Assembly (NCBI GenBank): GCA_002269645.1
Contig: NIVC01003103.1
Span: 62,001 to 126,000, forward strand
From: Macrostomum lignano
Lineage: Eukaryota
Direction: 5' to 3'
DNA: 64,000 nt
Positions within the stretch are counted from its first letter, which is position 1. Every line of letters begins with the position of its first letter. The notes below the pieces were generated by a model. It was not told the DNA's origin and ran no database searches. It saw only the letters and a list, made by a program, of their open reading frames with translations. Below are positions 6,421 through 43,977 of the stretch, in pieces. Made by a program: the position numbers and the translations under genes.

Positions 6421-6756
6421 TTCGAGTCGGGATTGCTGGATTACTAGAGTCGGGAAAAACAGATCTAAGGGTTATCTCAGCGGGGTCAGTGGGTTCGAAA
6501 AAGTGAAAAAGATCGCTGGTTTGCCGTCACCCGACTTTATAAAGTAATTGTCAAAAAATTGCTTGAACTAGTTTTCCCATGAATACAGCTCAAATGCAAT
6601 CTACATGTAGGACGTTAAACTAAGGTTTTTCAGTAATGCTAGGTTGTCTTAAGGTTACCAAAAAGTCTCTTAAGGAAGGCAGCGTCAACAAGGTGTCGAT
6701 AGTCGTAGGGGAGAAACAGTTGTCTAAAAGGGACAGAAAGTCGAAAAAGGGGCTGT

Positions 6757-14226: not shown

Positions 14227-14691
14227 CTGGCCACGGGGCAATCGGATTGAGCAGGGGGGGGGGGCGCCCGCCCTACTGCCTGATGCGGCTTGCCGCTTCC
14301 CCGTGGGTTTCTAACAAGTCAGCTTGGGACTCTTATTGAAATAAAAAGCGCACTTAAAATATTTAATTTGGATTCGTAGTGTTTACTACAGCAGCAATAA
14401 GGTGGGTACACCTGGACAGGTACTCACAGAGAGTGACAGAGCTTCTCAGATATGAAAACATGGAATGTGCACAAACCAAAGTCTATTGAAAATGTGAACT
14501 CCATAATGACACCTGGATATTGAGCAGTTTACTACCCACAGGATAAGCAAGCCATCACTGCTTAGTAACCCTTTCGCTTGAGTTGTTTTGTCGCAACTCA
14601 AAACCCCCGAGCACGCACGCGAAGACACGCACTCGCACAGGGTCTACAGTGGCCCTGAAATTCTCATCGGCTGGTGCCGCTGAGGGTTAGA

Positions 14692-14765
14692 CTCTCACGG
14701 TCGGGAGTCGAACCCCGGGCACTTCTGGCACGACTAATGCAGTTCTTTCCACTGAGGAGAACTCA
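14692..14765 (-). mobile_element. degenerate tRNA-like/SINE head fragment
   Basis: Minus strand has A-box-like TCCTCAGTGG and B-box GGTTCGACTCC at tRNA-like spacing, but the arms do not pair as a cloverleaf. Confidence 0.3.
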
Positions 14766-17617: not shown

Positions 17618-17907
17618 CATACATGCGCAACAGTCGGCCAATCTGGCTGACCGACTTGGCAGCCAATCAAGGAAGTCACAAAAATGCCTACCCGAAAAAA
17701 TACCAAAGTAGTATTACTAAGTAGCTATTGAGGCATTTTGACCTAATAAGACAGTTATAGTTACTCCTGCCATTTACTCAAAGTTGCGTTAATTTTGTGT
17801 TACGGTTTTTATTATATGTAAGTCACATTTTTGGCCAAAAATTATGTTGCATGTTTGTTAAAACTAAGTCGCATGGCTGACCAAACTTTGGAGGTTGCGC
17901 ATGTATG
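17618..17907. mobile_element. 290-bp MITE, hAT-like
   Basis: Perfect 14-bp TIR CATACATGCGCAAC (17618-17631) / GTTGCGCATGTATG (17894-17907). 8-bp TSD CTCCAAAA at 17610-17617 and 17908-17915. Confidence 0.88.
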
Positions 17908-18543: not shown

Positions 18544-19168
18544 GCTGCAGTGTCACTGCTGCGATGTCAGCAGTTCGTCTACCTCGGCGGTCTGGTTCCA
18601 GACGCTCGCGAGGACCTGCGACGCCGCCGCGGGCTTGCCTGGGCTGCCTTTCGTTCTGTGAGGGCAGTCCTGCAGTCCGAGGCCCTACCGGACCGCCAGA
18701 GGGCGGTGCTGTTCCAGGCGGTAATCGAGACTGTCCTGCTGTACAACGCCGAGACCTGGACGCTGACGGACTCACTCGAACAGCAAGTTGATGCGGCGCA
18801 CGCTAGTCTGCTGCGCGCCGCCTTCAACATCGGCGTCGAGCGAGTCACCAATGCGGCACTCTATCGCCGCGCTGGCCTGCCACGTCCAAGTGATCTACTG
18901 CACCGTCGGCGACTCCAGCTCGCAGGCCATCTCATCTGCGCCGAGTCGTACTGCCCACAGCCAGTGCAGGAGGTGCTGCTGCTCACGCTGCAGGCACCCT
19001 ACCGGCGAGGTCAAGCGCAAACTCGGCGTTATGTCAACTGTCTGCTGGCTGACGCCGGCGCCCCGGACACTGCCGGTGGCGCGGCCTTTGTTCACGCCCA
19101 AGCCATGAAGCGCGCCCTGTGACACTGACTTTTACCATCATAACAGCGTATTTTGTTGTTGTTGTTGT
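18544..19168 (+). mobile_element. 5'-truncated non-LTR retrotransposon (RTE-like ORF2 C-terminus)
   Basis: GC-rich island encoding FVYLGG...AWAAF...VLLYNAETWTLT...RRRLQLAGH (post-RT region of LINE ORF2). (TTG)n 3' tail. TSD TGTATAACAT at 18534-18543 and 19169-19178. Confidence 0.88.
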
Positions 19169-21814: not shown

Positions 21815-22431
21815 CTTGTATATAGCTAATGTAATTTATTCAAATAGATTATCCAAAACATAGCATGCCAGTTTAACAAAATAAATAATATATTTTTAGG
21901 TAAAGAAAAAGTGTTATAAAGCTTTATTAAATTATTATTAAATTACTCTTTGGGCATCATAAACTAAGGCAGTGAAAAACAAACTAGGATACCAAAAATC
22001 ATGGAAACCTTAAGCATAAAGTCATAATAAAATTAAAGGCAACACAATAAAAAAAATTTTAAATTCTTCACTATGTATTTGTATCATTAGTAATTAGTTA
22101 TATCTGATATTTTGTTGCCCCTAGTCAAGAAACAAATTTAATATGATTTTTGTCTATTATGAAAAATGTCAATTTGTTCATTTATGGTTTCATTGTATGA
22201 CTTAATTTTTTTATTGTAACATTATATGTTTGCATGGCATTAATAGATAGCAATTTATTTATTTCATGTTGCAAGTTGACTTGTTCAAAATCAATAATGG
22301 AAATATGTAAGTCAAATGTCACTATTTTCATGATACTAATAATTAAAAAATGTATTTGATCTCAATATTGACTATGGTCTTCACAGATATTTAATGTTTA
22401 TAATTTTTCCCCACTTGCCAATGCATTTTAG

Positions 22432-25400
22432 TGCAGCAAGCTGTTACAAATTACTGCAAACTTGACAAAAAGTTGGACTCCTGTACAACTATGTAAGTAC
22501 TAACATGGTCAGGCTGTCACCTGTGCTATTGTCTTGTCTATGCAGGCCACTTCCATAGGACTCACCAATTCTTGCACTTTGCAGCTCTGAGCTGTATGAT
22601 CGAATTGGCGGCACTGAGCTGGGCGCCTCCCTGCTGTGCACCGCCAATCCCGAGCAGCAGCTGCAGGTCACTCACTGGGTTCGCTACTCCCTGCTCCACC
22701 TGCGCCAGCGGCCTGACCTGCTGGCCTCTGCGCTGGCCCACGCCACCTACCTGGTGGGCGGCAGCCTCAGCCTGGCCGACCTGGCTGTCTGGGCGCAGCT
22801 CAGCTGCTGTCCGCGCTGGCAGGCCGCCAGGAAAGCCGGCGCCGCTCAGGCTGAGATCGAGCGGCACTTCCGGCTGATTGGCGCCGAGGTTGGCGACGCT
22901 GTTGGCGCGCTGAAAGCCCCAGCGACTGCGGCACCGGGCGATAGCGGCGCCGCTGGCATGAAGTTCGAGGAGGGCGGCAAATTCCGCGACCTCTCTGGTG
23001 CCGTGCACGGCGAGGTGGTGGTTCGATTCCCGCCCGAGGCCAGCGGCTACCTGCACGTCGGCCATGCCAAAGCCGCGCTGTTGAATCAGCATTACAGGAA
23101 CAGCTGCGGCGGCCGTCTCATCATGCGATTTGATGACACTAATCCGGCCAAGGAGACTGCCGAGTTTGAGCAGGTTAGAATGCGAATGCCAGTTTCGCGT
23201 GTCCCAGTGTCTCTAACGTACCATTTGGCAGCTGCATGCTGAAGTACTCAGGGTAGGTAGATGCACTTCTAAAGTACTTAAGGCAGGTACATTTGGATGC
23301 ACTTCTTAAGTACTCGGGCCCCGTTTCTGTGCTGTAATTGGTCCATACCCCAATGGTGCTATTTCTAAAATCCACGGTACCAATGTGTAATTTGGAGTAT
23401 TGGAGTCTCTAGTTTTTCAGTGCGACGCGACTGCTTCCCTCAGGTAATCCTAGAGGACGTGGCCGCCCTGGGCATCACCTACGATCATTTCTCGCACACG
23501 TCCGACCACTTCGACCGGATGATGCAGCTGTGCGAGCGAATGCTGCGCGAAGGCAAGGCTTTTGTTGACGACACGGACCCAGAGGCCATGAAGGCCGAGC
23601 GGGAGAAGCGGGTGGAATCCCGCAATAGAAACAATTGTGAGTGTAAAGCTTTACCTTAGCTATAATACTACTGGCTTCAGTAGTCAGTTTGGTTTATTTC
23701 ACTGAACTCCGACTCCATCTCCCCTGGTCAGCCGTGGAGCAGAACATGCGCCTGTGGGAGGAGATGAAGGCCGGCACTCCGCTGGGCTGTCGGTGCTGCG
23801 TGCGCGCCAAAATTGACATGCAATCGGACAATGGCTGCATGCGCGATCCCACCATCTACAGGTGCAAAAATGAGCCGCATCTGCGCACCGGTACTAAGTA
23901 CAAGTGAGTGCTGTTGGAGTAGCAATAAGTAAATCTGCTGAATTTATGACAATCCAGAATCAGTAACTGACTTTTCTAACCGTCATTGAAGAGTCTACCC
24001 GACCTACGACTTCGCCTGCCCGATTGTGGACTCGCTGGAGGGCGTCACGCACGCCCTGCGCACCCTGGAGTACAAGGACCGCGATGCCCAGTACAATTGG
24101 TTCATTGACGCGCTGGGTGAGCTGACACAGCTGACCTACCTGATCACTACTTGCACCAAATGTGAAACATTAGTCACTGAGATTTCTTGTCGGTCTTTCT
24201 GTTTTTGAAGGTCTTCGCCGGCCCCTGCTAGAGGAGTTCAGCCGACTGGCCCTGCAGAACACGGTGCTGAGCAAGCGCAAGCTCACCTGGTTCGTGAACG
24301 AAGGCCTGGTGGACGGCTGGGACGATCCCCGATTCCCCACCGTGCGGGGCATCCTCCGGCGTGGCATGACGCTCGAGGGCCTGCGGCAGTTCATCCTGGC
24401 CCAGGGATTCGCCAAATCCAACGCCACCATGGAGTGGGACAAGATCTGGGCGTTCAACAAGAAGGTGATCGACCCGGTGGCGCCCAGGTACACGGCGCTG
24501 TTCAAGAAAGAGGCTGTGCCGGTCCGAGTGACCAACTTTGACCGCGCCGAGCCCTACAGCTCCAAGGCGAGTCCTAGGTTTATTATTGTTTTAGCATGAC
24601 GAAGTTTTGTTCTTCAGAATGCTTTTTTAGTTTTTTACGCAGCGTCCGTGCAAATTAATAATCAGCCGCTCCACCTTGCAGGTTGCGCTGCACCCAAAGA
24701 ACGCGGACGTCGGCACTAAAACGATGTGGCACTGGCGCGAATTGCTCATTGAAGGCGCCGACGCACAGACTCTGCACGAAGGCGAGCTGGTCACCTTCAT
24801 CAACTGGGGCAACCTCTGCGTTACCCGCCTGGTCCGCGCGCCAGACGGCCGAGTCACAGAGGTTGAGGCTGAGCTTCGGTTGGACAACACAGACTACAAG
24901 AAGACGCTGAAGGTCACGTGGCTGGCAAACCTGCCCGCCAACCTGGTGCCCGCCGTGTGCGTCCACTACGATCACATCATCAGCAAGCCGCTGGTGGGCA
25001 AGGACGAGGACTTCCGGCAGTTTGTGAACCGGAACTCCAAGAGACAGGAGCTGATGCTGGGTGATGAAGGACTGGCCAACCTCCGCAAAGGCGACATCAT
25101 CCAGCTTCAACGGCGCGGCTTCTTCATCTGCGATGAACCAGCAGGCGAGAGCGCGTACTCGGGCTGCGCCATGCCCTGCTACCTCATTGCCGTGCCCGAC
25201 GGCCACCAGAAGGAGATGCCGACTTCCGGGTCCAAGCACAAGGAGGCTCCGGCCGGCCAGGAGGCCAAGGCAAGCACCGGCGGCCGCGTCTCCTCGAAGG
25301 GCGCGGCAGGCAAGGCGGCCTCAAAGAAGGCCTCGTCACCGCCGGCCGTGACAGCAACGGTTAATGGCGGCGGTCCAGGACCAGACGCTAGAAGCCTTGA

Positions 25401-28400
25401 CCTGCTGCGGCAGATTGAGGCGCAGGGCAACCTAGTGCGCGAGATGAAGGCCGCGAAAGCTGACAACGTGAGGATAATTAGAATGATTCATAAATTCTCC
25501 ATTGTAAACTAGCCATGCGTTTTGGCCTTGCAGATTCACGCGTGTCGCTATCAGCATCTCTCTAACCTTCTCTTTTTGATTAAATACAGAATGCTGTACA
25601 AGTCGAGTTGAAAAAACTGCTGCAGCTCAAGGCGGACTTCAAGTCTCACAGCGGCCAGGACTGGAAGCCCGACCTGCTGCAGAAAGCCTCAGCTGCCGAC
25701 CCAGCAACCGCAGCGGCGCCGCCTCCTCAGGGCTCGGGGCTGCAGCAGTTCAAGCCGCTGCTGGAGAAAATCGCAGCACAAGGCGATCTGGTCAGGGACC
25801 TGAAGGCGAAGAAGGCGGACCAGGTGAGCTGCGTGAGCCTGTTTGAGTAGGGAATTGAGCTGACCAGAGTGATGAACTCACAGTTGCACTGAGACAGCGC
25901 AGTGATGCAAGTCATCTGTGTGCACTCTAATTTTTTTCTGATGCTGGTCGCTCCATCACTTGCAGCAGGCATTCAATTTGTCAATTTAGTTGGGTAACTG
26001 GATGTGTTGCTATGGCATACTCGGCGGTTGTGTTGCTGTGGTAGACTCGGTAACTGGGTGTGTTGCTGTGGTAGACTCGGTATCTAGGTGTGGTGCTTCA
26101 ATGGCTTAAAGTATAACTTGCTCAATTCCGAATGCAATGATGACTCAAAGTCGCACTGATTACACATCTGTAATGATGTCAATCTACCTTTAATTTTACT
26201 GAAGCATTCGGACTCGTCGGTTTGAATTCAGAAAAGTGAACACTGTCGCATTTTTCTTAGAGACGGTCGGCTGTGCGCACACTGGCTGCATTTCAAGCGA
26301 CATGCCGACATTTTCACAATCGGCGAGATTCATTACTGCCCATTCTGCCGACTTCTGTGCAGGCACACACTCACATAGGGGTGCACAGCGGCCCTAAATT
26401 TGTTTATCGATTGGCATGTTCACTTCACTGTGCTTTGGGGGTTGGCCATCAAGTGCGTTAATCGCACGAGCAGACCTAAGCCGAGATTGCAATTTAGAGC
26501 TTAGAATCGAGTCTGAGCTGCTGGCACATCAAAGCGCCGCGCTACGCCAATCAGTGCAGCCGCTCCCCCAACCTCACTGTGAACCTTCAGGCCGCAATCA
26601 AGTCGGCAGTGGACCAGCTACTGCAGCTCAAGGCGGACTTCAAGTCTCACAGCGGTCAGGACTGGAAGCCCGAACTGCTGCAGAAGGCCACCCCTGCCGC
26701 CCCAGCTGCCGCCCCAGCAACCGCAGCGGCGCCGCCTCCTCAGGACTCGGGGCTGCAGCAGTTCAAGCCGCTGCTGGAGAAAATCGCAGCACAAGGCGAT
26801 TTGGTCAGGGACCTAAAGGCAAAGAAGGCGGACCAGGTGAGCTGCGTGAACCTGTTTGAGTAGGGAATTGAGCTGACCATAATGATGAACTCACAGTCGC
26901 ACTGAGACAGCGCAGTGATGCAAGTCATCTGTGCGCACTCTAATTTTTTTCTGATGCTGGTCGCTCTTCTGTTTCTATCGTGCTTTGCTATACTTCAGTT
27001 CTGAAGTCGAGTTCTGTATGTCTTTAATTTAGGTTTCAAGCCGATTTTCCGGCTCAGCCGAGTGCACCAGCTACTTCCACGCCGTTTTGCACTGAAGCAT
27101 TTGAGAATTCAGAGCCACATGCTCTGACAATGCGCTCGTATAGAGAGCTCAGTTAGTTTGAATGGCGCGTGAGCATCAGAGCCACATGCTCTGACAATGC
27201 GCTCGTATAGAGAGCTCAATTAGTTTGAATGGCGCGTGAGCATCAGAGCCACATGCTCTGACAATGCGCTCGTATAGAGAGCTCAATTAGTTTGAATGGC
27301 GCGTGAGCATCAGAGCCACATGCTCTGACAATGCGCTCGTATAGAGAGCTCAATTAGTTTGAATGGCGCGTGAGCATCAGAGCCACATGCTCTGACAATG
27401 CGCTCGTATAGAGAGCTCAATTAGTTTGAATGGTGCGTGAACATCAGAGCCACATGCTCTGACAATGCGCTCGTATAGAGAGCTCAATTAGTTTGAATGG
27501 TGCGTGAACATCAGAGCCACATGCTCTGACAATGCGCTCGTATAGAGAGCTCAATTAGTTTGAATGGTGCGTGAACATCAGAGCCACATGCTCTGACAAT
27601 GCGCTCGTATAGAGAGCTCAATTAGTTTAAATGGTGCGTGAACATCAGAGCGACATGCTCTGACAATGCGCTCGTATAGAGAGCTCAATTAGTTTGAATG
27701 GCGCGTGAGCATCAGAGCCACATGCTCTGACAATGCGCTCGTATAGAGAGCTCAATTAGTTTAAATGGTGCGTGAACATCAGAGCGACATGCTCTGACAA
27801 TGCGCTCGTATAGAGAGCTCAATTAGTTTGAATGGCGCGTGAGCATCAGAGCCACATGCTCTGACAATGCGCTCGTATAGAGAGCTCAATTAGTTTGAAT
27901 GGCGCGTGAGCATCAGAGCCACATGCTCTGACAATGCGCTCGTATAGAGAGCTCAGTTAGTTTGAATGGCGCGTGAGCATCGTGGACCTCGAAGTCGTTT
28001 GGTGCCATCAAATTTATCTGGGGCATGCATTTCTGCTCCTATTGCTGAAGCTGTTCCACCAGATGCTGATATCCAGAGTTGTAAAGCTGCAAGGGGAACA
28101 TGAGCTCAGGATTACCAGAGTATCGCTGAATTCCCGGCGATCCGCAGCCGTCGCCATAGTTATATCCGTCACAACCTTTGTAATTGCCGCATTAAAAGCT
28201 CATTCCTAGTTTGTTGCTCCACGGCTGTTGCATTTCGTCGTCTGACCCAGGTGTTTGGTGTGGGCAATGCACAATTCGAAGAAAGATCATTCACATTCAT
28301 TGTCTGCACGCTGATTTACCGTAGTCTATGGTGAAATATATGTTAAGCCATCTACGAAGTATTTATCATTCAATGCAATTTTAACAACAAAAGTCAGGAA

Positions 28401-30374
28401 TCGGCATCAGAGGGCGTGGCAAATTCTAGGGCCGAGTCGTCGTTATCCGTAGAGGTTGAAGTCGAACTACCTTCGCACAACGAATTCAACAACGCATCAG
28501 ACAGTTGACCCATGTCTGTTGCCTTTCTTTTGCAGTTTGTCGGATAGCTGCAAAAGAATACGCAGTCAGCTAATAGACATACACAAAAATGCTACACACA
28601 AAAGCAGCTGCACCGCCTTAGAGTCCTTGTCTTGAGTTTGCTGATTTGCTCAAAATTTACGGCAAACAAATCATTGAAATTCAGTTGAAGAAAGATTAGA
28701 AAGGCTAGGCCTTTTCTCTCGACTACTCTCAAGGGCTCTATTTTTATTACTCGCCAGTCCCAAGAGTCTGCGCATCAAGAGGTAGGAAAGGAAAGGCCAT
28801 AGACAACAGGTGCAAGCGATGGGGCACGGGTGGTGTTCACAAGAGGCAGTCAAAGCCGTCAGTGTACAAAGCAATGTACATCAAATTTCAGTTGCCGTGA
28901 AACATCTGAACCTAAGCTTCATGCGTATTAATAATAATAAAGCGCTTTGTGTATTTAGCAATTCAATAAGAAACTTGGTTAGGTTAGTAGCTTCAATTTG
29001 TATATTGGTCATTGGAATAAAATCAAGCTGGAGCTGCTATATTGGACTTCGTCGTGAAAAGTTTAGCTGGCCCATGCAGCATAAAACTTGACTACTATGT
29101 CCTCAATTCCGAATGCGATGATGACTCACAGTCGCACTGATTATACACCTGTAATGATGTCAGTCTACCTGTGTGCACTCTCATTTTTTACTGATGCATT
29201 CGGACTCTGTGATTGAAATTCAGAAAAATTAAAAACTTCCGCATTCTGTTGTCCCAGTCAGTGCAGCCGCTCCCCCAACCCGCTGTGAATCTTCAGGCCG
29301 CAATCAAGTCTGCAGTGGACCAGCTGCTGCAGCTCAAGGCGGACTTCAAGTCTCACAGCGGTCAGGACTGGAAGCCCGACTTGCTGCAGAAAGCCTCGGC
29401 TGCCGCCCCAGCAGCCGCAGCGGCGCCTCCTCAGGGCTCAGGGCTGCAGCAGTTCAAGCCGCTGCTGGAGAAAATCGCAGCACAAGGCGATCTGGTCAGG
29501 GACCTGAAGGCAAAGAAGGCGGACCAGGTGAGCTGCGTGAGCCTGTTTGAGTATGGAATTGAGCTGACCAGAGTGATGAACTCACAGTTGCACTGAGACA
29601 GCGCAGTGATGCAAGTCATCTGTGTGCACTCTAATTTTTTTCTGATGCTGGTCGCTCCATCACTTGCATCAGGCATTCAATTTGTCAATTTAGTTGGGTA
29701 ACTGGGTGTGTTGCTATGGGATACTCTGTAACTGGGTGTGTTGCTATGGGATACTCGGTAACTGGGTGTGTTGCTGTGGCAGACTCGGTAACAGGGTGTG
29801 TTGCTATGGCAGACTCGGTAACTAGGTGTGTTGCTATGGAATACTATGGGATATGGGATATCACTTGCTCAATTTCGAATGCAATGATGACTCAAAGTCG
29901 CACTGATTACACACATGTAATGACGTCAATCTACCAATGTACACTCTAATTTTTTACTGATGCATTCGGATTGGGTTGAAAAGTGATTGGTTAAAAGTGG
30001 GACTTGACAATTCCATTCCAGCTGGTCATTGATCCATCCATCTCCGCTATCCTCAGGCGGCGGTGAAGTCTGCTGTTGATCAGTTGCTGGCGCTGAAGGC
30101 GGAGTTCAAGGCCCAGTCCGGCATGGACCACAAGCCGGACCTCATCAAGCAGCTGGACCAGCAGCAGCCGCCGCAGGCAGCAGGCGCTTCCGCCGGCCTG
30201 GACCAGCTGCGGCAGATCAAGGCGGCCGGAGACCGGGTGCGCGCAATGAAGGAGTCCGGCGCTGGCAAGGCAGAACTGCAGCCTGCCTTGGACCAGCTGA
30301 TGCAGGCGAAGGCGCAATTCAAGCAGGCCACGGGCAAAGAGTACAAGCCGGAGATGCTGAAGGCTCTGGCTTGA
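22432..30374 (+). CDS. glutamyl-tRNA synthetase (EPRS N-half: GST-like + GluRS + 5 WHEP domains), terminating at its own stop; 5'-most exon(s) unresolved
   Basis: Exons 22432/22437-22492, 22585-23173, 23444-23636, 23732-23903, 23992-24116, 24211-24566, 24682-25467, 25590-25823, 26591-26836, 29297-29527 and 30057-30374 (TGA). All phases from 22585 onward are consistent. Motifs [45 protein letters not shown] and GWDDPRFPT. Confidence 0.93.
25862..25949 (+). ncRNA. intronic C/D-box snoRNA candidate, type A copy 1
   Basis: C box GTGATGA 25869-25875, D' CTGA 25889, C' GTGATGC 25902, D CTGA 25938-25941. Terminal stem GACCAG/CTGGTC. D guide GCACTCTAATTTTTTT is complementary to conserved 18S GAAAAAAUUAGAGUG. 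Confidence 0.8.
26127..26212 (+). ncRNA. intronic C/D-box snoRNA candidate, type B copy 1 (D guide partly deleted)
   Basis: C ATGATGA 26137, D' CTGA 26156, C' ATGATGT 26173, D CTGA 26199. 9-bp stem TCCGAATGC/GCATTCGGA. The D guide is reduced to TTAATTTTA. Confidence 0.7.
26875..26962 (+). ncRNA. intronic C/D-box snoRNA candidate, type A copy 2
   Basis: C ATGATGA 26882, D' CTGA 26902, C' GTGATGC, D CTGA 26951. Guide GCACTCTAATTTTTTT intact. Confidence 0.8.
27109..27980. repeat. 67-bp tandem repeat, 13 copies, in a GluRS intron
   Basis: Unit TCAGAGCCACATGCTCTGACAATGCGCTCGTATAGAGAGCTCAATTAGTTTGAATGGCGCGTGAGCA. The copies are nearly identical and there are no spacers. Confidence 0.95.
29108..29204 (+). 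ncRNA. intronic C/D-box snoRNA candidate, type B copy 2
   Basis: C ATGATGA 29118, D' CTGA 29137, C' ATGATGT 29154, D CTGA 29191. Stem TCCGAATGC/GCATTCGGA. Guide GCACTCTCATTTTTTA has one mismatch to 18S. Confidence 0.78.
29566..29653 (+). ncRNA. intronic C/D-box snoRNA candidate, type A copy 3
   Basis: C GTGATGA 29573, D' CTGA, C' GTGATGC, D CTGA 29642. Stem GACCAG/CTGGTC. Guide intact. Confidence 0.8.
29875..29970 (+). ncRNA. intronic C/D-box snoRNA candidate, type B copy 3
   Basis: C ATGATGA 29884, D' CTGA, C' ATGACGT, D CTGA 29957. Stem CGAATGCA/TGCATTCG. Guide ACACTCTAATTTTTTA is a perfect complement to AAAAAAUUAGAGUGU. Confidence 0.8.
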
Positions 30375-30894
30375 ATCAACGGGTTTATTGTTGCTACCCG
30401 GCTCAGCATCTCATTTTTTGTATTCGTTAGTAAATTACGAGTGCTCTGCAAGCCGATGGCAACTTTGCGGCTTTGTGATCTATCGCTGGTTTCTGTCTGA
30501 TGTTGGTGTGACTGCCGTGCAAGAGTGAGGTTATGGTATATCCAAAATTTACAATTAGTAAAGCAAGTTCAATAAGCACCAATGCTATGTTGTCTGTAGT
30601 GTCAGTTTTTCATGATTTTGCTTTTTCCCATGCGTTTTTTCTTTTCCCCTATTATTTGCTCTTTGACCTTTCTGTCCTGCTCGCATTCTTCCGCCCGAGT
30701 CGAGGATTTCATTTGATCCTGCGCATCAACAGCGAAGCAAATCAAATACAGACTGAGAGAGATTCAATGTAACTGCTTTACCTGCCTGACCTGTTTGACT
30801 GGATTCACTTGTATGCGACTTTTTCTTTTGGAGCTTTAAAGTTTATTCTGAACTTTGGGAATTTCCTTCCAATTACTGACTCTGTGCTCCTGTC

Positions 30895-31972
30895 CGCCTC
30901 ACCTTCTCTCATCTATCTCTCTTCTCTCCTCTGACTCCCCTTCTCTCATCACTGACTCTCCCCTTCTCCCATCAATGACTCTCCCCTTCTCTCATCACTG
31001 ACTCTCCCCTTCTGTCATCACTGACCCTCCTCTTCTCCCATCACTGACTCTCCCCTTCTCTCATCACTGACTCTCCCCTTCTCTCATCACTGACTCTCCC
31101 CTTCTCTCATCACTGCCTCTCCCTTCTCTCATCACTGCCTCTCCCCTTCTCTCATCACTGACTCTCCCCTTCTCCCATCAATGACTCTCCCCTTCTCTCA
31201 TCACTGACTCTCCCCTTCTGTCATCACTGACTCTCCCCTTCTCTCATCACTGACTCCCCTTGTCTCATCACTGACTCTCCTCTTCTCTCATCACTGCCTC
31301 TCCCCTTCTCTCATCACTGACTCCCCTTCTCTCATCACTGACTCTTCTCTTCTCTCATCACTGACTCTCCTCTTCTCTCATCACTGCCTCTCCCCTTCTC
31401 TCATCACTGACTCCCCTTCTCTCATCACTGACTCTTCTCTTCTCTCATCACTGACTCTTCTCTTCTCTCATCACTGACTCTCCCCTTCTCTCATCACTGA
31501 CTCCCCTTCTCTCATCACTGACTCTCCCCTTCTCTCATCACTGCCTCTCCCTTCTCTCATCACTGCCTCTCCCCTTCTCTCATCGCTGACTCTCCCCTTC
31601 TCCCATCAATGACTCTCCCCTTCTCTCATCACTGACTCTCCCCTTCTGTCATCACTGACCCTCCCCTTCTCTCATCACTGACTCTCCTCTTCTCTCATCA
31701 CTGACTCTCCCCTTCTCTCATCACTGACTCTCCCCTTCTCTCATCACTGACTCCCCTTCTCTCATCACTGACTCTCCCCTTCTCTCATCACTGACTCCCC
31801 TTCTCTCATCACTGACTCCCCTTCTCTCATCACTGACTCTCCCCTTCTCTCATCACTGACTCTCCCCTTCTCTCATCACTGACTCCCCTTCTCTCATCAC
31901 TGACTCTCCCCTTCTCTCATCACTGACTCTCCCCTTCTCTCATCACTGACTCTCCCTTCTCTCATCACCGAC
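30895..31972. repeat. pyrimidine-rich 22-24-bp minisatellite between the GluRS stop and the ProRS start
   Basis: Unit CTCTCATCACTGACTCTCCCCTTC and 22-bp variants; strongly C/T-biased on the + strand. Confidence 0.95.
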
Positions 31973-32124
31973 TCTCCTCATTGCCATTCTTCATTCCATC
32001 TCTTAAAAGCCCAGCTAACTTTTCTAAATAGTTTTGATTTTGCTCACTAGAGGCATCCGAGTGCAAGTCTCTGACACTACTAACAGTAGTACCCGAATCG
32101 CCCCATGCCGGTGGCAGACGCGAA

Positions 32125-35100
32125 ATGGCTGACGCGGACGCGATTAAGAGTGAAATCGACCAGCTGGGAGACAAGATTCGCGGCTTGAAGGCTGGTGGAG
32201 CCGACAAGTCTGTGGTGGACATGGAGGTGGCCGCACTAAAGGAGCTGAAGCAGCGCTACAAAGACCTCACTGGGGTTGAACTGGCCGGCGGCCGGCCAAA
32301 CAAGAAGGTCAAGGAGGCGGCAAAGCCTCCGGCTGTCCAGGACGACCAGGACGATGCGGGCCGGAAGCACCAGACTCGGCTGGGCATGGAGGCCAGCAAG
32401 GCAGACAACCTGGCTGACTGGTACTCGCAGGTGAGTTCACCGTTGTGACTCGCCCACGCCCCTGAGAATCGCCCCTATCAAACCGCCCCTGAGAATCACC
32501 CATCAAACCGCCCCTGAGAATCGCCCCCATCAAACCGCCCCTGAGAATCACCCATCAAATTGCCCCTGAGAATCGCCCCCATCAAACCGCCCCTGAGAAT
32601 CGCCCCCATCAAACCGCCCCTGAGAATCACCCATCAAATCGCCCCTGAGAATCGCCCTTATCGAACCGCCCCTGAGAATCGCCCCCATCAAACCGCCCCT
32701 GAGAATCGCCCCCATCAAACCGCCCCTGAGAATCGCCCCCATCAAACCGCCCCTGAGAATCGCCCCCATCAAACCGCCCCTGAGAATCGTCCCCATCAAA
32801 CCGCCCCTGAGAATCGCCCCAATCAAACCGCCCCTGAGAATCGCCCCAATCAAACCGCCCCTGAGAATCGCCCCCATCAAACCGCCCCTGAGAATCGCCC
32901 CAATCAAACCGCCCCTGAGAATCGCCCCAATCAAACCGCCCCTGAGAATCGCCCCCATCAAACCGCCCCTGAGAATCGTCCCCATCAAACCGCCCCTGAG
33001 AATCGCCCCATCAAACCGCCCCTGAGAATCGCCCCCATCAAACCGCCCCTGAGAATCGTCCCCATCAAACCGCCCCTGAGAATCGCCCCCATCAAACCGC
33101 CCCTGGGAATCACCCCTATCAAACCGCCCCTGAGAATCGCCCCAATCAAACCGCCCCTGAGAATCGTCCCCATCAAACCGCCCCTGAGAATCGTCCCCAT
33201 CAAACCGCCCCTGAGAATCGCCCCCATCAAACCGCCCCTGAGAATCGCCCCCATCAAACCGCCCCTGAGAATCGCCCCCATCAAACCGCCCCTGGGAATC
33301 ACCCCTATCAAACCGCCCCTGAGAATCGCCCCCATCAAACCGCCCCTGAGAATCGCCCCCATCAAACCGCCCCTGAGAATCACCCCCATCAAACCGCCCC
33401 TGAGAATCGCCCCCATCAAACCGCCCCTGAGAATCGTCCCCATCAAACCGCCCCTGAGAATCGCCCCCATCAAACCGCCCCTGAGAATCGCCCCCATCAA
33501 ACCGCCCCTGAGAATCGCCCCCATCAAACCGCCCCTGAGAATCGCCCCCATCAAACCGCCCCTGGGAATCACCCCTATCAAACCGCCCCTGAGAATCGCC
33601 CCAATCAAACCGCCCCTGAGAATCGTCCCCATCAAACCGCCCCTGAGAATCGCCCCCATCAAACCGCCCCTGAGAATCGCCCCCATCAAACCGCCCCTGA
33701 GAATCACCCATCAAATCGCCCCTGAGAATCGCCCTTATCGAACCGCCCCTGAGAATCGCCCCCATCAAACCGCCCCTGAGAATCGCCCCCATCAAACCGC
33801 CCCTGAGAATCGCCCCCATCAAACCGCCCCTGAGAATCGTCCCCATCAAACCGCCCCTTAGAATCGCCCCAATCAAACCGCCCCTGAGAATCGCCCCAAT
33901 CAAACCGCCCCTGAGAATCGCCCCCATCAAACCGCCCCTGAGAATCGCCCCAATCAAACCGCCCCTGAGAATCGCCCCAATCAAACCGCCCCTGAGAATC
34001 GCCCCCATCAAACCGCCCCTGAGAATCGTCCCCATCAAACCGCCCCTGAGAATCGCCCCCATCAAACCGCCCCTGAGAATCGCCCCCATCAAACCGCCCC
34101 TGAGAATCGCCCCCATCAAACCGCCCCTGGGAATCACCCCTATCAAACCGCCCCTGAGAATCGCCCCCATCAAACCGCCCCTGAGAATCGCCCCCATCAA
34201 ACCGCCCCTGAGAATCACCCCAATCAAACCGCCCCTGAGAATCGCCCCCATCAAACCGCCCCTGAGAATCGTCCCCATCAAACCGCCCCTGAGAATCGCC
34301 CCCATCAAACCGCCCCTGAGAATCGCCCCATCAAACCGCCCCTGAGAATCGTCCCCATCAAACCGCCCCTGAGAATCGCCCCATCAAACCGCCCCTGGGA
34401 ATCACCCCTATCAAACCGCCCCTGAGAATCGCCCCAATCAAACCGCCCCTGAGAATCGTCCCCATCAAACCGCCCCTGAGAATCGCCCCCATCAAACCGC
34501 CCCTGAGAATCGCCCCCATCAAACCGCCCCTGAGAATCACCCATCAAATCGCCCCTGAGAATCGCCCTTATCGAACCGCCCCTGAGAATCGCCCCCATCA
34601 AACCGCCCCTGAGAATCGCCCCCATCAAACCGCCCCTGAGAATCGCCCCCATCAAACCGCCCCTGAGAATCGTCCCCATCAAACCGCCCCTGAGAATCGC
34701 CCCAATCAAACCGCCCCTGAGAATCGCCCCAATCAAACCGCCCCTGAGAATCGCCCCCATCAAACCGCCCCTGAGAATCGCCCCAATCAAACCGCCCCTG
34801 AGAATCGCCCCAATCAAACCGCCCCTGAGAATCGCCCCCATCAAACCGCCCCTGAGAATCGTCCCCATCAAACCGCCCCTGAGAATCGCCCCCATCAAAC
34901 CGCCCCTGAGAATCGCCCCCATCAAACCGCCCCTGAGAATCGTCCCCATCAAACCGCCCCTGAGAATCGCCCCCATCAAACCGCCCCTGGGAATCACCCC
35001 TATCAAACCGCCCCTGAGAATCGCCCCAATCAAACCGCCCCTGAGAATCGTCCCCATCAAACCGCCCCTGAGAATCGCCCCCATCAAACCGCCCCTGAGA

Positions 35101-38100
35101 ATCGCCCCCATCAAACCGCCCCTGAGAATCGTCCCCATCAAACCGCCCCTGAGAATCGCCCCCATCAAACCGCCCCTGGGAATCACCCCTATCAAACCGC
35201 CCCTGAGAATCGCCCCAATCAAACCGCCCCTGAGAATCGTCCCCATCAAACCGCCCCTGAGAATCGCCCCCATCAAACCGCCCCTGAGAATCGCCCCCAT
35301 CAAACCGCCCCTGAGAATCGCCCCATCAAACCGCCCCTGAGAATCGCCCCCATCAAACCGCCCCTGAGAATCGCCCCCATCAAACCGCCCCTGAGAATCA
35401 CCCCCATCAAACCGCCCCTGAGAATCGCCCCCATCAAACCGCCCCTGAGAATCGTCCCCATCAAACCGCCCCTGAGAATCGCCCCCATCAAACCGCCCCT
35501 GAGAATCGCCCCCATCAAACCGCCCCTGAGAATCGCCCCCATCAAACCGCCCCTGAGAATCGCCCCCATCAAACCGCCCCTGGGAATCACCCCTATCAAA
35601 CCGCCCCTGAGAATCGCCCCAATCAAACCGCCCCTGAGAATCGTCCCCATCAAACCGCCCCTGAGAATCGCCCCCATCAAACCGCCCCTGAGAATCGCCC
35701 CCATCAAACCGCCCCTGAGAATCACCCATCAAATCGCCCCTGAGAATCGCCCTTATCGAACCGCCCCTGAGAATCGCCCCCATCAAACCGCCCCTGAGAA
35801 TCGCCCCCATCAAACCGCCCCTGAGAATCGCCCCCATCAAACCGCCCCTGAGAATCGTCCCCATCAAACCGCCCCTGAGAATCGCCCCAATCAAACCGCC
35901 CCTGAGAATCGCCCCAATCAAACCGCCCCTGAGAATCGCCCCCATCAAACCGCCCCTGAGAATCGCCCCAATCAAACCGCCCCTGAGAATCGCCCCAATC
36001 AAACCGCCCCTGAGAATCGCCCCCATCAAACCGCCCCTGAGAATCGTCCCCATCAAACCGCCCCTGAGAATCGCCCCCATCAAACCGCCCCTGAGAATCG
36101 CCCCCATCAAACCGCCCCTGAGAATCGTCCCCATCAAACCGCCCCTGAGAATCGCCCCCATCAAACCGCCCCTGGGAATCACCCCTATCAAACCGCCCCT
36201 GAGAATCGCCCCAATCAAACCGCCCCTGAGAATCGTCCCCATCAAACCGCCCCTGAGAATCGCCCCCATCAAACCGCCCCTGAGAATCGCCCCCATCAAA
36301 CCGCCCCTGAGAATCGTCCCCATCAAACCGCCCCTGAGAATCGCCCCCATCAAACCGCCCCTGGGAATCACCCCTATCAAACCGCCCCTGAGAATCGCCC
36401 CAATCAAACCGCCCCTGAGAATCGCCCCCATCAAACCGCCCCTGAGAATCACCCCCATCAAACCGCCCCTGAGAATCGCCCCCATCAAACCGCCCCTGAG
36501 AATCGTCCCCATCAAACCGCCCCTGAGAATCGCCCCCATCAAACCGCCCCTGAGAATCGTCCCCATCAAACCGCCCCTGAGAATCGCCCCCATCAAACCG
36601 CCCCTGAGAATCGCCCCCATCAAACCGCCCCTGAGAATCGCCCCCATCAAACCGCCCCTGAGAATCGCCCCCATCAAACCGCCCCTGAGAATCGCCCCCA
36701 TCAAACCGCCCCTGAGAATCGCCCCCATCAAACCGCCCCTGAGAATTGCCCCCATCATACCGCCCCTGAGAATCGCCCCCATCAAACCGCCCCTGGGAAT
36801 CACCCCTATCAAACCGCCCCTGAGAATCGCCCCCATCAAATCACCCTTGAGAATCGCCCCCATCAAACCGCCCCTGAGAATCGCCCCCATCAAACCGCCC
36901 CTGAGAATCGCCCCCATCAAACCGCCCCTGAGAATCGCCCCGATCAAACCGCCCCTGAGAATCGCCCCCATCAAACCGTCCCTGAGAATCGCCCCCATCA
37001 AACCGCCCCTGGGAATCACCCCCATCAAATCACCCTTCAGAATCGCCCCTGTCAAATTGAACTTCTGAATCACCCCCATCAAACTACCCCTGAGAATCGC
37101 CCATCAAACCGCACCTGGGAACGCTCATCAAACCTCTCTCAATAAAAATCCCACCGCAGGTGATAACAAAGTCGGAGCTCATTGAGTATTACGACATATC
37201 GGGATGCTACATCCTGCGCCCTTGGGCCTACTCAATCTGGGAGATGGTGCAGCGCTACGTTGACGACCGCATCAAGGGCATGGGAGTGCAGAATGTCTAT
37301 TTCCCCATGTTCGTGTCGAACGCTGCTCTGGAGAAGGAGAAAACCCACATCACCGACTTCGCTCCCGAGGTTGCATGGGTGACGCGGAGCGGCCGGTCCG
37401 ACCTGGCCGAGCCCATCGCCATCCGGCCAACCTCCGAGACCGTCATGTACCCGTCATTTGCCAAGTGGATCCAGAGCTACAGGGACCTGCCGCTCAAGGT
37501 TAACCAGTGGAACAACGTTGTCAGGTGGGAGTTCAAGCACCCGCAGCCGTTCCTGCGCACCAGGGAGTTCCTCTGGCACGAGGGCCACACGGCGTTTGCC
37601 ACGCGGGAGGAGGCGGAGGTGGAGGTGAGCAATTACCGAATGCTGGCGAACACATTTGAGAAAATTTGAACACCTGTGTAACATTATGTGGAATTTTTAT
37701 TTGGGATCTAGCCTCTGGGATCGGAGATCTGGGATCGGAGATCTGGGATCGGAGATCTGGGATCGGAGATCTGGGATCGGAGATCTGGGATCGGAGATCT
37801 GGGATCGGAGATCTGGGATCGGAGATCTGGGATCGGAGATCTGGGATCGGAGATCTGGGATCGGAGATCTGGGATCGGAGATCTGGGATCGGAGATCTGG
37901 GATCGGAGATCTGGGATCGGAGATCTGGGATCGGAGATCTGGGATCGGAGATCTGGGATCGGAGATCTGGGATCGGAGATCTGGGATCGGAGATCTGGGA
38001 TCGGAGATCTGGGATCGGAGATCTGGGATCGGAGATCTGGGATCGGAGATCTGGGATCGGAGATCTGGGATCGGAGATCTGGGATCGGAGATCTGGGATC

Positions 38101-39495
38101 GGAGATCTGGGATCGGAGATCTGGGATCGGAGATCTGGGATCGGAGATCTGGGATCGGAGATCTGGGATCGGAGATCTGGGATCGGAGATCTGGGATCTG
38201 GGACCTCATTAACGCAACCAGCCCGCCGCTGCCGTCCGCCCAGGTGATGGAGATCCTGGCCATGTACGAATACGTGTACGAGAATCTGATGGCCGTCCCG
38301 GTCATCAAGGGCCGCAAGACCGAAAAGGAGAAGTTCGCCGGCGGCGACTACACCACTACCGTGGAGGTGTACATCGGCGCCAGCGGTCGCGCAATCCAGG
38401 GCGCCACCAGCCACCACCTGGGCCAGAACTTCTCCCAAATGTTCGACATCGTGTTCGAGGACCCGGCCACCGGCGAGAAGCGCCACGTACACCAGAACTC
38501 CTGGGCAATCACCACCCGGTCCATCGGCGTCATGGTGATGGTCCACGGTGACGACAAAGGCCTGGTGCTGCCGCCCCGCCTGGCCGCCCACCAGCTGGTG
38601 CTGGTGCCCTGCGGCCTCACCGTGCGCACAACCGAGGAGGCGAAGCGCGCCCTGCTGGACAAGTGCAATTCGCTAGCTGCCGAGCTGCGCGCCTGCGGCC
38701 TGCGGGTGCACGCGGACCTGCGAGAGCACTACTCGCCCGGCTGGAAGTTCAACCACTGGGAGCTCAAGGGAGTCCCAGTCAGGATCGAAGTTGGGCCAAG
38801 GGACATGGCGGCCAAGCAGGTGCGTTCGCTGCTTCTTTTACTAACCCATCGATCTCATCCCAATCTCATCCATCCCAATCTCACCCATCCCAAACTCACC
38901 CCATCTCAATCTCACCCCATCTCAATCTCATCCATCCCAATCTGATCCCATCCCAATCTCACCCATCCCAATCTCACCCATCCAAATCTCATCCATCCAA
39001 ATCTCATCCATCCCAATCTCATCCATCCAAATCTCATCCATCCCAATCTTACCCTGACCCGAACCCGCACTCTCCATACCGAAGGTGGTGGCGGCCATCC
39101 GGTACTCCGGTGAGAAGCGCACCCTGCCAGAGGAGGGCCTGGCCGCCAGTCTGCAGGCCCTGCTGGACTCGGTGCAGTCCGAGATGTTCGCCCGCGCCAA
39201 GGCGGAGCAGGACGCGCGCCTGTCCGTGTGCCCGGACCTGGCCTCCCTGTGCGCCGCACTGGACAAGCAGCACCTCATCCTGGCGCCATTCTGCGGCGAC
39301 CCCGACTGCGAGGACCTCATCAAGAAGGACAGCGCGCGCAACGCCATTGTGGAAGAGGGCGTCCCGTCCATGGGCGCCAAGAGTTTGTGCATCCCCTTCA
39401 ACCAGCCGGACGAGATCGGGCCGGACACAAAGTGCGTGCATTCCCATTGCGGCCGCAAGCCCCAATTCTACACCCTGTTCGGCCGCAGCTACTGA
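32125..39495 (+). CDS. prolyl-tRNA synthetase (EPRS C-half) with one N-terminal WHEP domain, 585 aa
   Basis: Exons 32125-32430 (ATG), 37160-37624, 38244-38819 and 39085-39495 (TGA), all phase 0, total 1758 nt. Motifs [54 protein letters not shown] and the C-terminal LFGRSY. Confidence 0.95.
32455..37120. repeat. 27-bp minisatellite (~170 copies) filling ProRS intron 1
   Basis: Unit GAGAATCGCCCCCATCAAACCGCCCCT, with 26-bp variants that shift ORF frames. Confidence 0.97.
37716..38198. repeat. 14-bp tandem repeat (~34 copies) in ProRS intron 2
   Basis: Unit GGGATCGGAGATCT, essentially homogeneous. Confidence 0.97.
38850..39050. repeat. ~15-bp C-rich tandem repeat in ProRS intron 3
   Basis: Unit ATCTCA(T/C)CCATCCCA and variants. 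Confidence 0.88.

Positions 39496-42376: not shown

Positions 42377-43977
<1,601 letters not shown>

What the first reader, a model, noticed from the sequence alone, without database searches (positions are those of the whole stretch)
22432..39495. EPRS fission caught in place: adjacent, co-oriented GluRS-WHEP5 and WHEP-ProRS genes
Seen in sequence: the GluRS frame runs through five WHEP domains and ends at TGA 30372-30374 (...[12 protein letters not shown]), with no consensus donor in the last exon. ProRS begins 1.75 kb later at its own ATG (32125) with a complete WHEP, and has an in-frame TGA upstream at 32035. All WHEP donors are phase 0, and the only phase-0 acceptor before ATG 32125 is an atypical GAG (32052). 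Established: most metazoans have one fused EPRS with linker WHEPs; from memory, nematodes split it into GluRS with several WHEPs and ProRS with one WHEP. Inference: this is an independent fission with the halves still syntenic. It could be a bicistronic unit resolved by SL trans-splicing at TTTTGCTCACTAG (32050), or a locus making both fused and split proteins. Either would affect multisynthetase-complex anchoring of ProRS and WHEP non-canonical functions.
Basis: partly seen in the sequence, partly recalled or inferred. Interest (0 to 1): 0.85.

Follow-up and report, generated by a model that had tools for sequence, protein, structure and literature searches.

The report
Flatworm EPRS gene split in place
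In the flatworm Macrostomum lignano, the usually fused animal enzyme gene EPRS is broken into two neighbouring same-strand genes (GluRS with 4-5 WHEP repeats, then WHEP-ProRS); this is a second, independent case of a split known only from nematodes, and here the halves still sit side by side.

Summary
The window is Macrostomum lignano contig NIVC01003103.1. A GluRS gene (ATG 22297, 12 exons) runs through five Pfam WHEP domains to TGA 30372-30374. A 585-aa WHEP-ProRS gene starts 1.75 kb downstream at ATG 32125, with an in-frame TGA at 32035.

GenBank's RNA-seq-guided annotation already lists two separate proteins, PAA53324.1 and PAA53325.1, from different transcriptional-unit clusters. A second duplicated locus has the same stop, spacer and start, so the stop is not an assembly error.

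An older fused UniProt model joins the halves through a very poor donor (AGA|GTACAA) and is probably a prediction artefact.

The ProRS WHEP matches the last linker WHEP of fused mollusc EPRS. Published work reports a fused EPRS in Schistosoma. This is therefore a lineage-specific fission like the nematode one, but with the halves still adjacent.

SL trans-splicing or an operon remains possible: the repeat-adjusted spacer is under 1 kb and there is a good acceptor at 32052|32053. The annotation gives it no support.

- The gene starts at 22297, not 22432.
- The annotation and the sister locus use four WHEPs, not five.
- There are three phase-0 AGs before the ATG, not one.

It is moderately interesting: a new member of a known kind.

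The parts
22297..25467 (+). GluRS gene, coding exons 1-8: 22297-22306, 22432-22492, 22585-23173, 23444-23636, 23732-23903, 23992-24116, 24211-24566, 24682-25467. They encode a short GST-like N-terminus, the class I catalytic domain (HVGH 23054-23065, LSKRK 24267-24281), the anticodon-binding domains and the first half of WHEP1.
   Evidence: The translation equals PAA53324.1 from its Met onward. Pfam hits: tRNA-synt_1c, tRNA-synt_1c_C and tRNA-synt_1c_C2. The intron at 24567-24681 has a GC donor.
25590..29527 (+). Three WHEP cassette exons: 25590-25823, 26591-26836 and 29297-29527. Each encodes the second half of one WHEP, a linker and the first half of the next. All are phase 0 and multiples of 3 nt long.
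   Evidence: Exon 29297-29527 is absent from the annotated protein and from the sister locus L006.
30057..30374 (+). Terminal GluRS exon: second half of WHEP4, a linker, an intron-less WHEP5 and the tail EMLKALA, ending at stop TGA 30372-30374.
   Evidence: The stop is at the same position in L006, where the protein ends ...EMLKTLT*.
30375..30930 (+). Unique spacer segment after the GluRS stop, presumed to hold the 3' UTR and poly(A) region. It has no AATAAA. Variant hexamers: AGTAAA at 30429 and 30557, AATAAG at 30571, AATACA at 30745.
   Evidence: Alignment to L006 shows many substitutions and indels in the first ~170 nt, then 98.7% identity.
30931..31977 (+). Pyrimidine-rich 23-bp minisatellite (CTCCCCTTCTCTCATCACTGACT, about 46 copies) that fills most of the spacer. 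Each unit carries a CTGAC branch-point-like motif.
   Evidence: TRF result. The array is about 570 bp in the sister locus.
31978..32124 (+). Unique 147 nt upstream of the ProRS ATG. It contains the in-frame TGA 32035-37; candidate 3' splice or SL acceptors at 32050|51, 32052|53 (best) and 32117|18; TACTAAC at 32078-84; an out-of-frame uATG at 32105; and the annotated ProRS 5' end at 32108-32110.
   Evidence: It matches L006 at 145 of 146 positions.
32125..32430 (+). ProRS exon 1: ATG, a complete intron-less WHEP, a linker and the start of the ProRS core (...ADWYSQ).
   Evidence: Pfam WHEP-TRS covers residues 8-56.
32431..37159 (+). ProRS intron 1, almost entirely a 27-bp minisatellite (32457-37121, about 173 copies).
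37160..39495 (+). ProRS exons 2-4 (37160-37624, 38244-38819, 39085-39495): class II core, anticodon-binding domain and ProRS-C_1, ending ...FGRSY* at TGA 39493-39495.

Best explanation
The ancestral fused EPRS gene of animals has undergone fission in place in the Macrostomum lignano lineage.

**What the two genes are (shown).** The upstream gene makes GluRS with four or five C-terminal WHEP repeats and ends at its own stop, just after an intron-less last WHEP. The downstream gene lies 1.75 kb away on the same strand. It makes ProRS with a single N-terminal WHEP from its own ATG. The break falls in the linker before the last WHEP, the same place as in C. elegans.

**How they are expressed (inferred).** The two proteins are made from separate mature mRNAs.

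**How the ProRS 5' end is made (inferred).** I put roughly 55% on a promoter in the conserved ~150 nt between the minisatellite and the ATG. I put roughly 35% on SL trans-splicing of a read-through precursor.

**Likely origin (inferred).** The ancestor was probably a dual-output locus, making fused EPRS plus a ProRS-only mRNA from an internal promoter or alternative first exon. Drosophila does this, and the bdelloid rotifer loci look the same. Loss of the mid-WHEP introns in the last two WHEPs then removed the acceptor that GluRS exons used to reach ProRS.

**Expected consequence (by analogy with C. elegans).** GluRS stays in the multisynthetase complex and ProRS is free.
For: - **Gene models.** The exon model reproduces the GenBank proteins exactly. 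Pfam finds 5 WHEPs in GluRS and 1 in ProRS.
- **Annotation.** GenBank's annotation, which its authors built from RNA-seq (StringTie/TACO/TBONE), has two adjacent genes, PAA53324.1 and PAA53325.1. Their transcriptional-unit cluster prefixes differ (Mlig003944 and Mlig003030).
- **Second locus.** NIVC01000735.1 has the same stop, spacer, ATG and downstream tubulin/GTPase synteny, despite 3-4% divergence around the junction.
- **No bridging intron.** The only published fused model, A0A1I8GLS9, needs donor AGA|GTACAA. That scores -5.9 against 7.4-13.5 for the 14 real donors. The model also drops other conserved segments.
- **Control for a false split.** In Argopecten the reading frame stays open upstream of the annotated Met, back to an acceptor that completes a half-WHEP. 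Here an in-frame stop lies upstream and the WHEP is whole.
- **Descent from a fused gene.** The ProRS WHEP is only 27-31% identical to the GluRS WHEPs. It matches the ProRS-proximal WHEP of Mytilus EPRS, including ...TG.(D/E)LAGG.
- **Literature.** Fission is described only in nematodes. S. mansoni, molluscs and annelids are reported fused. Drosophila makes a ProRS-only product from an alternative promoter.
Against: - I could not read any RNA or protein data directly. The annotation is indirect evidence, and both CDSs are flagged 5'-partial.
- There is no canonical AATAAA within 560 nt of the GluRS stop.
- In-frame fusions are possible on paper. Phase-0 WHEP donors could join the good acceptor at 32052|32053. 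Donor 30236|37 could join cryptic AGs inside the ProRS WHEP at 32175|76 or 32208|09.
- Repeats can break RNA-seq-based transcriptional units, so different TU prefixes do not exclude a common precursor.
- 'Independent' rests on published reports for other flatworms. I did not test those sequences.
Confidence: 0.8

Rival explanations
1. Bicistronic operon. GluRS and ProRS are transcribed as one precursor from the GluRS promoter. The ProRS mRNA is released by SL trans-splicing at an acceptor in 32050-32118, coupled to 3' end formation of GluRS. This is a variant of the fission reading, not a denial of it.
For: - About 30% of M. lignano genes are SL trans-spliced and about 15% lie in operons. The published criterion is same-strand neighbours with a repeat-adjusted distance under 1 kb.
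- Here the distance from the stop to the annotated ProRS 5' end is 1735 nt. It is 688 nt after subtracting the minisatellite.
- 32052|32053 is the best-scoring AG in the whole spacer (7.1, within the range of real acceptors). It is preceded by a T-rich tract and a CTAAC about 35 nt upstream.
- The SL ends in ATG. Spliced at 32053, that ATG would be in frame with ProRS.
- There is no AATAAA after the GluRS stop.
- The spacer is a 1-kb pyrimidine and branch-point-like array.
Against: - The annotated ProRS 5' end at both loci (32108-32110) is not preceded by AG. The pipeline cuts at mapped SL sites, so a detected site would have set the 5' end there.
- The two genes have different TU prefixes.
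- No candidate acceptor matches the enriched [T/C]TNCAG motif.
- Being in frame and open over 24 codons is expected by chance about 1 time in 10 (my estimate).
Confidence: 0.3
2. It is still one fused EPRS gene. The spacer is an intron, the TGA exon is bypassed or spliced internally, and the main product is a ~1500-1700-aa EPRS, as in the UniProt/WormBase ParaSite model A0A1I8GLS9.
For: - A public 1507-aa model joins ...QATGKE to [10 protein letters not shown] in frame.
- The junction uses GA|GTACAA (30340|41) and GGCAG|A (32117|18). A TACTAAC lies 32 nt upstream of that acceptor.
- Other in-frame combinations exist.
Against: - The donor scores -5.9. It lacks G at -1 and at +5, and all 14 real donors have G at +5.
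- The fused model also deletes conserved GluRS and ProRS segments, as ab initio models tend to.
- The later RNA-seq-guided annotation splits the genes at both loci. Its ProRS transcript includes 32110-32117, which that intron would remove.
- Both flanking WHEPs are complete, with a stop on one side and a start on the other.
Confidence: 0.07
3. Assembly or annotation artefact. The TGA, or the spacer itself, is an assembly error or a collapsed repeat, and the real gene is continuous.
For: The M. lignano genome is repeat-rich and partly duplicated, and the spacer contains a minisatellite.
Against: The same stop, the same unique flanks and the same ATG are found at a second locus. That locus differs by substitutions, indels, array length and WHEP copy number, so the two were assembled independently.
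Confidence: 0.02

Closest known systems
C. elegans / Rhabditina split EPRS (GluRS with six C-terminal WHEPs; ProRS with one N-terminal WHEP)
   Same: The break point is the same: the linker before the last WHEP. The products are the same: GluRS-WHEPn and WHEP-ProRS. GluRS keeps the N-terminal GST-like region that anchors it in the multisynthetase complex.
   Different: It is in a different phylum (Platyhelminthes, Macrostomorpha). Here the halves remain adjacent and co-oriented, 1.75 kb apart. In C. elegans, from memory and not tested here, the two genes are on different chromosomes. There are 4-5 WHEPs rather than 6, and three of them are very recent cassette duplicates.
Fused bifunctional EPRS of most animals (e.g. 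human EPRS1, Mytilus EPRS P0122)
   Same: All domains are in the same order. GluRS is about 50% identical and ProRS about 60% identical to fused orthologues. Mid-WHEP phase-0 intron positions are shared with a mollusc and with rotifers.
   Different: There is no continuous reading frame. A stop follows WHEP5, then 1.75 kb of non-coding spacer, then a separate ATG.
Drosophila GluProRS dual-output gene (full-length protein plus ProRS-only protein from an alternative promoter)
   Same: A stand-alone WHEP-ProRS product arises from the 3' half of the locus. Insect 'isoform X2' proteins of about 900-1000 aa with WHEP plus ProRS appear among the hits.
   Different: Drosophila keeps the fused product. 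In M. lignano no credible fused frame remains.
Bdelloid rotifer loci (Rotaria L003, Adineta L008)
   Same: GluRS-WHEP lies directly upstream of, and co-oriented with, a WHEP-ProRS that has its own ATG.
   Different: In the rotifers the last GluRS exon ends in half a WHEP with a GT donor. That donor can join the same second-half exon that the ProRS first exon uses. A fused isoform therefore still looks possible there. In M. lignano that intron is gone.
M. lignano SL trans-spliced operons (Ustyantsev & Berezikov 2021)
   Same: The genes are same-strand neighbours, the repeat-adjusted spacing is under 1 kb, and the spacer is inflated by repeats.
   Different: Trans-splicing of the downstream gene is the defining evidence. 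It is not shown here, and the annotated 5' end does not suggest it.

Membership tests
Eukaryotic class I GluRS (tRNA-synt_1c) | Catalytic domain with HIGH and KMSKS-type motifs, plus E/Q-type anticodon-binding domains | tested here: met
   PF00749 (E = 7.6e-112), PF03950 and PF20974 all hit. HVGH is at 23054-23065 and LSKRK at 24267-24281.
Eukaryote/archaeal-type class II ProRS | Class II core, HGTP anticodon-binding domain and C-terminal ProRS-C_1 domain ending in ...RSY | tested here: met
   PF00587, PF03129 and PF09180 all hit. The protein is 57-67% identical to animal ProRS moieties and ends FGRSY.
WHEP-TRS repeat | A roughly 50-aa helix-turn-helix repeat recognised by PF00458 | tested here: met
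   Five stretches in the 1106-aa GluRS model and one in ProRS. The annotated isoform and the sister locus have four.
Bifunctional fused EPRS | GluRS and ProRS joined in one reading frame of one mRNA | tested here: not met
   There is a stop at 30372-74 and an in-frame stop at 32035-37. No intron with usable sites bridges them. The RNA-seq-guided annotation has two genes at both loci. RNA itself was not examined.
Split EPRS of the C. elegans type | Separate genes encoding GluRS with several C-terminal WHEPs and ProRS with one N-terminal WHEP | tested here: met
   The comparison with the nematode architecture rests.
Split EPRS of the C. elegans type | Derived by fission from a fused ancestor, not primitively separate | tested here: met
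   The ProRS WHEP corresponds to the ProRS-proximal linker WHEP of mollusc EPRS, and the halves are still in EPRS order. The fused state in other flatworms is taken from the literature.
M. lignano SL-resolved operon | Same-strand neighbours with a repeat-adjusted intergenic distance under 1 kb | tested here: met
   1735 nt minus the 1047-nt tandem array leaves 688 nt, before subtracting the 3' UTR.
M. lignano SL-resolved operon | The downstream gene carries the 35-nt SL at its 5' end | not testable with these tools
   No RNA reads were available. The annotated 5' end at 32108-32110 is not preceded by AG, which argues weakly against it.

The most novel reading that the evidence does not exclude
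The pair is an SL trans-spliced operon. The fission became possible because trans-splicing can cap and release a downstream cistron.
- The SL, which ends in AUG, would be added at 32052|32053. Its AUG would then be in frame and give ProRS a 25-residue N-terminal extension.
- More generally, fused genes such as EPRS would come apart preferentially in lineages with SL trans-splicing, such as rhabditid nematodes and Macrostomum.
- Bdelloid rotifers would show an intermediate, dual-output stage.
Probability: 0.2. Interest if true: 0.7.

Novelty: new member of a known kind. Interest (0 to 1): 0.45.

Why it matters
**For EPRS evolution.** EPRS is the only fused aminoacyl-tRNA synthetase, and its WHEP linker carries non-canonical functions such as GAIT-type translational control. 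The literature treats its fission as a nematode peculiarity. A second, independent fission at the same linker position suggests that point is a preferred break point.

**For mechanism.** Because the halves are still adjacent, this locus preserves the mechanism: a stop after an intron-less WHEP, a repeat-filled spacer, and a new 5' end. In nematodes that record has been erased.

**For experiments.** M. lignano has stable transgenesis. One can therefore test whether ProRS leaves the multisynthetase complex, and whether re-fusing the two halves matters.

**For annotation.** The UniProt entry A0A1I8GLS9 is flagged as probably a false fusion.

Tried and rejected
- **Transcript contigs.** I looked for M. 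lignano transcript contigs in the assembly collections. The clusters hold only GenBank and UniProt models.
- **Supplementary tables.** I searched the supplements of two M. lignano papers for Mlig003030 and Mlig003944. There were no held files or no hits.
- **Argopecten as a second in-place split.** The annotation looked like one. I rejected it because the reading frame continues upstream of the annotated Met to an acceptor that completes a half-WHEP, so that split is an annotation artefact.
- **The fused UniProt model.** I considered it as evidence of a real intron and rejected it on donor quality and its other deletions.
- **Conserved spacer as evidence of a promoter.** The unique spacer parts are more alike between the two loci than the flanking exons are (p = 0.011). 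I rejected this as evidence because divergence is mosaic across the locus: GluRS exons 3-9 and their introns are 0.2-0.4% diverged.
- **Rfam.** A scan of the whole window found nothing. The SL sequence is not in the window.
- **Small splice-site matrices.** The position-weight matrices were built from 14 sites. The acceptor matrix scores two real sites below zero, so it only ranks candidates.
- **Third large protein search.** I did not run it. Its top-120 listing cannot bring up the more divergent flatworm orthologues.
Full report
**Source of the window.** The ProRS protein assembled from the window is 100% identical to GenBank PAA53325.1 of Macrostomum lignano. The fetched locus L001, from assembly GCA_002269645.1 contig NIVC01003103.1, is identical to the window from position 22110 onward. 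The organism is a free-living flatworm in which about 30% of genes are SL trans-spliced and about 15% lie in operons.

**GluRS gene.** I built the exon model by hand and checked it against the public protein.
- It has 12 coding exons from ATG 22297 to TGA 30372-30374.
- Without exon 29297-29527, the translation equals PAA53324.1 residue for residue from its first Met.
- With that exon it is 1106 aa. Pfam finds the class I catalytic domain, both anticodon-binding domains and five WHEP-TRS repeats.
- One intron (24567-24681) has a GC donor.
- WHEPs 1-4 are each split by a phase-0 intron in mid-domain. Three cassette exons (234, 246 and 231 nt) each carry the second half of one WHEP, a linker and the first half of the next.
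- WHEP2 and WHEP3 are identical in protein sequence. WHEP4 is 87% identical to them, WHEP1 63% and WHEP5 about 42%.
- The last exon holds a complete, intron-less WHEP5 and then EMLKALA-stop.

**ProRS gene.**
- It has four exons, 585 aa and one WHEP at residues 8-56.
- Its frame is closed by TGA 32035-37, 29 codons upstream of the ATG.
- Its WHEP is only 27-31% identical to the GluRS WHEPs. It lines up with the ProRS-proximal WHEP of Mytilus EPRS.
- The halves therefore descend from a fused gene that broke in the linker before the last WHEP.

**Are they really two genes?** Four lines of evidence say yes.
- GenBank's annotation was built from RNA-seq with StringTie/TACO and a boundary pipeline that uses SL and poly(A) reads. 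It has two consecutive proteins from different transcriptional-unit clusters, Mlig003944 and Mlig003030.
- A second locus, NIVC01000735.1 (L006), has the same pair, PAA77577.1 and PAA77578.1. The stop codon, spacer layout, ATG and downstream tubulin and GTPase genes are the same. That locus differs by substitutions, indels, a shorter minisatellite and one fewer WHEP cassette. The stop is therefore not an assembly error.
- The one fused public model, UniProt A0A1I8GLS9 (1507 aa, from the older ML2 assembly), joins ...QATGKE to [10 protein letters not shown]. This needs donor AGA|GTACAA at 30340|41, which scores -5.9 on a matrix where the 14 real donors score 7.4-13.5. The model also deletes conserved blocks elsewhere.
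- A control shows what a false split looks like. The scallop Argopecten is annotated with the same split, but its frame stays open upstream of the annotated Met, back to an acceptor that completes a half-WHEP. Nothing like that exists here.

**What cannot be excluded.**
- The last GluRS exon has one near-threshold donor, CGG|GTGCGC at 30236|37 (score 6.8, phase 0).
- Three AGs give phase-0 exon starts before the ATG: 32053, 32062 and 32068. Of these, 32052|53 is the best-scoring AG in the whole spacer.
- A WHEP-cassette donor joined to 32053 would be in frame, but it would leave a broken WHEP followed by 24 unrelated residues.
- Cryptic AGs inside the ProRS WHEP, at 32175|76 and 32208|09, sit at positions that would rebuild a hybrid WHEP. 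They lack any pyrimidine tract and score -5.9 and -7.7.
- A minor fused isoform is therefore possible on paper and unsupported by the annotation.

**The spacer (30375-32124).**
- It begins with 556 nt of unique sequence that has no AATAAA. Only AGTAAA at 30429 and 30557 and weaker variants are present.
- Next comes a 1047-bp pyrimidine-rich 23-bp minisatellite.
- The last 147 nt are unique and match the sister locus at 145 of 146 positions.
- The published operon criterion is a repeat-adjusted same-strand distance under 1 kb with an SL trans-spliced downstream gene. The distance here is 688 nt, so the first half of the criterion is met.
- The second half cannot be tested here. The annotated ProRS CDS is 5'-partial and begins at 32110 at both loci, so the model transcript starts at 32108-32110, which is not preceded by AG. 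This argues weakly against a detected SL site.
- If the SL (...TTGCATG) were added at 32053, its AUG would be in frame with ProRS. By my estimate, chance gives that about one time in ten.
- I put an own promoter at about 55% and an SL-resolved precursor at about 35%.

**Comparison with other animals.**
- The literature describes EPRS fission only in nematodes. It reports fused EPRS in S. mansoni (without WHEPs), annelids and a mollusc. My GluRS search returned fused 1600-1850-aa proteins from many molluscs.
- No paper in the searchable library links EPRS with Macrostomum or flatworm fission.
- Drosophila makes both the full-length protein and a ProRS-only protein, by alternative promoter use.
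- In two bdelloid rotifers, GluRS lies 136-180 nt upstream of a WHEP-ProRS with its own ATG. There the last GluRS exon ends in the first half of a WHEP with a GT donor. The ProRS first exon supplies an alternative first half, and both can join the same second-half exon.
- That looks like a locus able to make both fused and ProRS-only products.
- It suggests a path to the Macrostomum state. Start from such a dual-output gene, lose the mid-WHEP introns of the last two WHEPs (both are intron-less here), and the fused isoform can no longer be spliced. This path is inference.

**Verdict.** It is a new, apparently unreported instance of a known kind of event. Its added value is that the halves are still adjacent in a transgenic model organism. 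Interest is moderate, because the gene models are already public and the functional consequences are extrapolated from C. elegans.

Noticed in passing
window 25590-25823, 26591-26836, 29297-29527; L006 4292-4525 and 6448-6693: The WHEP cassette exons are all phase 0 and multiples of 3 nt, so skipping any of them rebuilds an intact WHEP. The window locus has three cassettes and the sister locus has two. The GenBank model skips the third. This is either copy-number variation or alternative splicing of WHEPs, as described for Nematostella.
   Followed up: partly
window 24567-24681: This GluRS intron has a GC-AG boundary (AAG|GCGAGT). The RNA-seq-guided model uses it. The older fused model avoided it and lost 12 residues ([12 protein letters not shown]).
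   Followed up: partly
window 32457-37121, 37714-38198, 38856-39049, 27109-27981, 30931-31977: The introns and the spacer are filled with minisatellites: 27 bp x173 (4.7 kb, nearly all of ProRS intron 1), 14 bp x34.6 (100% matches), 15 bp x12.7, 67 bp x13 and 23 bp x46. Together they give a strong GC skew (down to -0.5) over 30-38 kb. The sister locus's whole ProRS gene is 3.4 kb against 7.4 kb here.
   Followed up: partly
window 22585-32430 versus L006 1293-10321: Divergence between the two loci is mosaic. GluRS exons 3-9 differ by 0.16% and their introns by 0.39%. The last GluRS exon differs by 2.9% plus a 6-nt indel. The first ~170 nt after the stop differ by about 7% plus indels. ProRS exon 1 differs by 3.9%. 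Most amino-acid differences between the copies fall in WHEP5 and its tail and in the ProRS WHEP and linker. The cause is unexplained; gene conversion or relaxed constraint at the junction are both possible.
   Followed up: partly
L003 6757-10400 (Rotaria sp.), L008 4466-7200 (Adineta steineri): In bdelloid rotifers GluRS lies directly upstream of WHEP-ProRS. The last GluRS exon ends in half a WHEP with a GT donor, and ProRS has an alternative first exon supplying the other first half. The motif AG|CGATCTCTACCGA just after the GluRS donor region is conserved between the two genera. The Rotaria annotation lists no gene over the GluRS region.
   Followed up: partly
L002 686-901 and 9869-10102 (Argopecten irradians): The annotated split into a GluRS-WHEP gene and a 605-aa 'EPRS-like' ProRS gene looks like an annotation artefact or a promoter isoform of a fused gene. 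The mid-WHEP phase-0 intron position is shared by the mollusc, the rotifers and the flatworm.
   Followed up: yes
L007 (Toxocara canis JPKZ01003130.1) 1-17847: A 592-aa WHEP-ProRS has its own ATG, an in-frame stop just upstream, and no GluRS similarity in the 10 kb upstream. Stand-alone WHEP-ProRS models also appear for Panagrellus and Steinernema. The nematode fission may be wider than the 'Rhabditina only' stated in the literature.
   Followed up: partly
UniProt A0A1I8GLS9 (P0242) versus window 30340-32118: This public 1507-aa 'Glutamyl-tRNA synthetase' entry for M. lignano is probably a false fusion of the two genes through a non-consensus intron. It also has internal deletions in both halves.
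   Followed up: yes
window 32105-32107: An out-of-frame upstream ATG lies 20 nt before the ProRS start. Its context is weak (C at -3 and +4) and it opens a 33-codon overlapping uORF. The annotated transcript start at about 32110 would exclude it.
   Followed up: no
window 42377-43693 (-): There is an intact alpha-tubulin reading frame of 438 aa from an internal GTG; the first ~13 residues are not in this ORF. The window's annotation calls only a 157-aa Tubulin_C product, while the sister locus has a 451-aa tubulin.
   Followed up: no
window 47113-52029 (-), 18550-19122 (+), 61924-62511 (+): A single 1638-aa ORF encodes a large URGCP/GVIN-type GTPase (Pfam families from the annotation). The ORF at 18550-19122 looks, by eye, like a reverse-transcriptase fragment. 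The exon at 61924-62511 looks, by eye, like a phosphatidylinositol-transfer protein.
   Followed up: no
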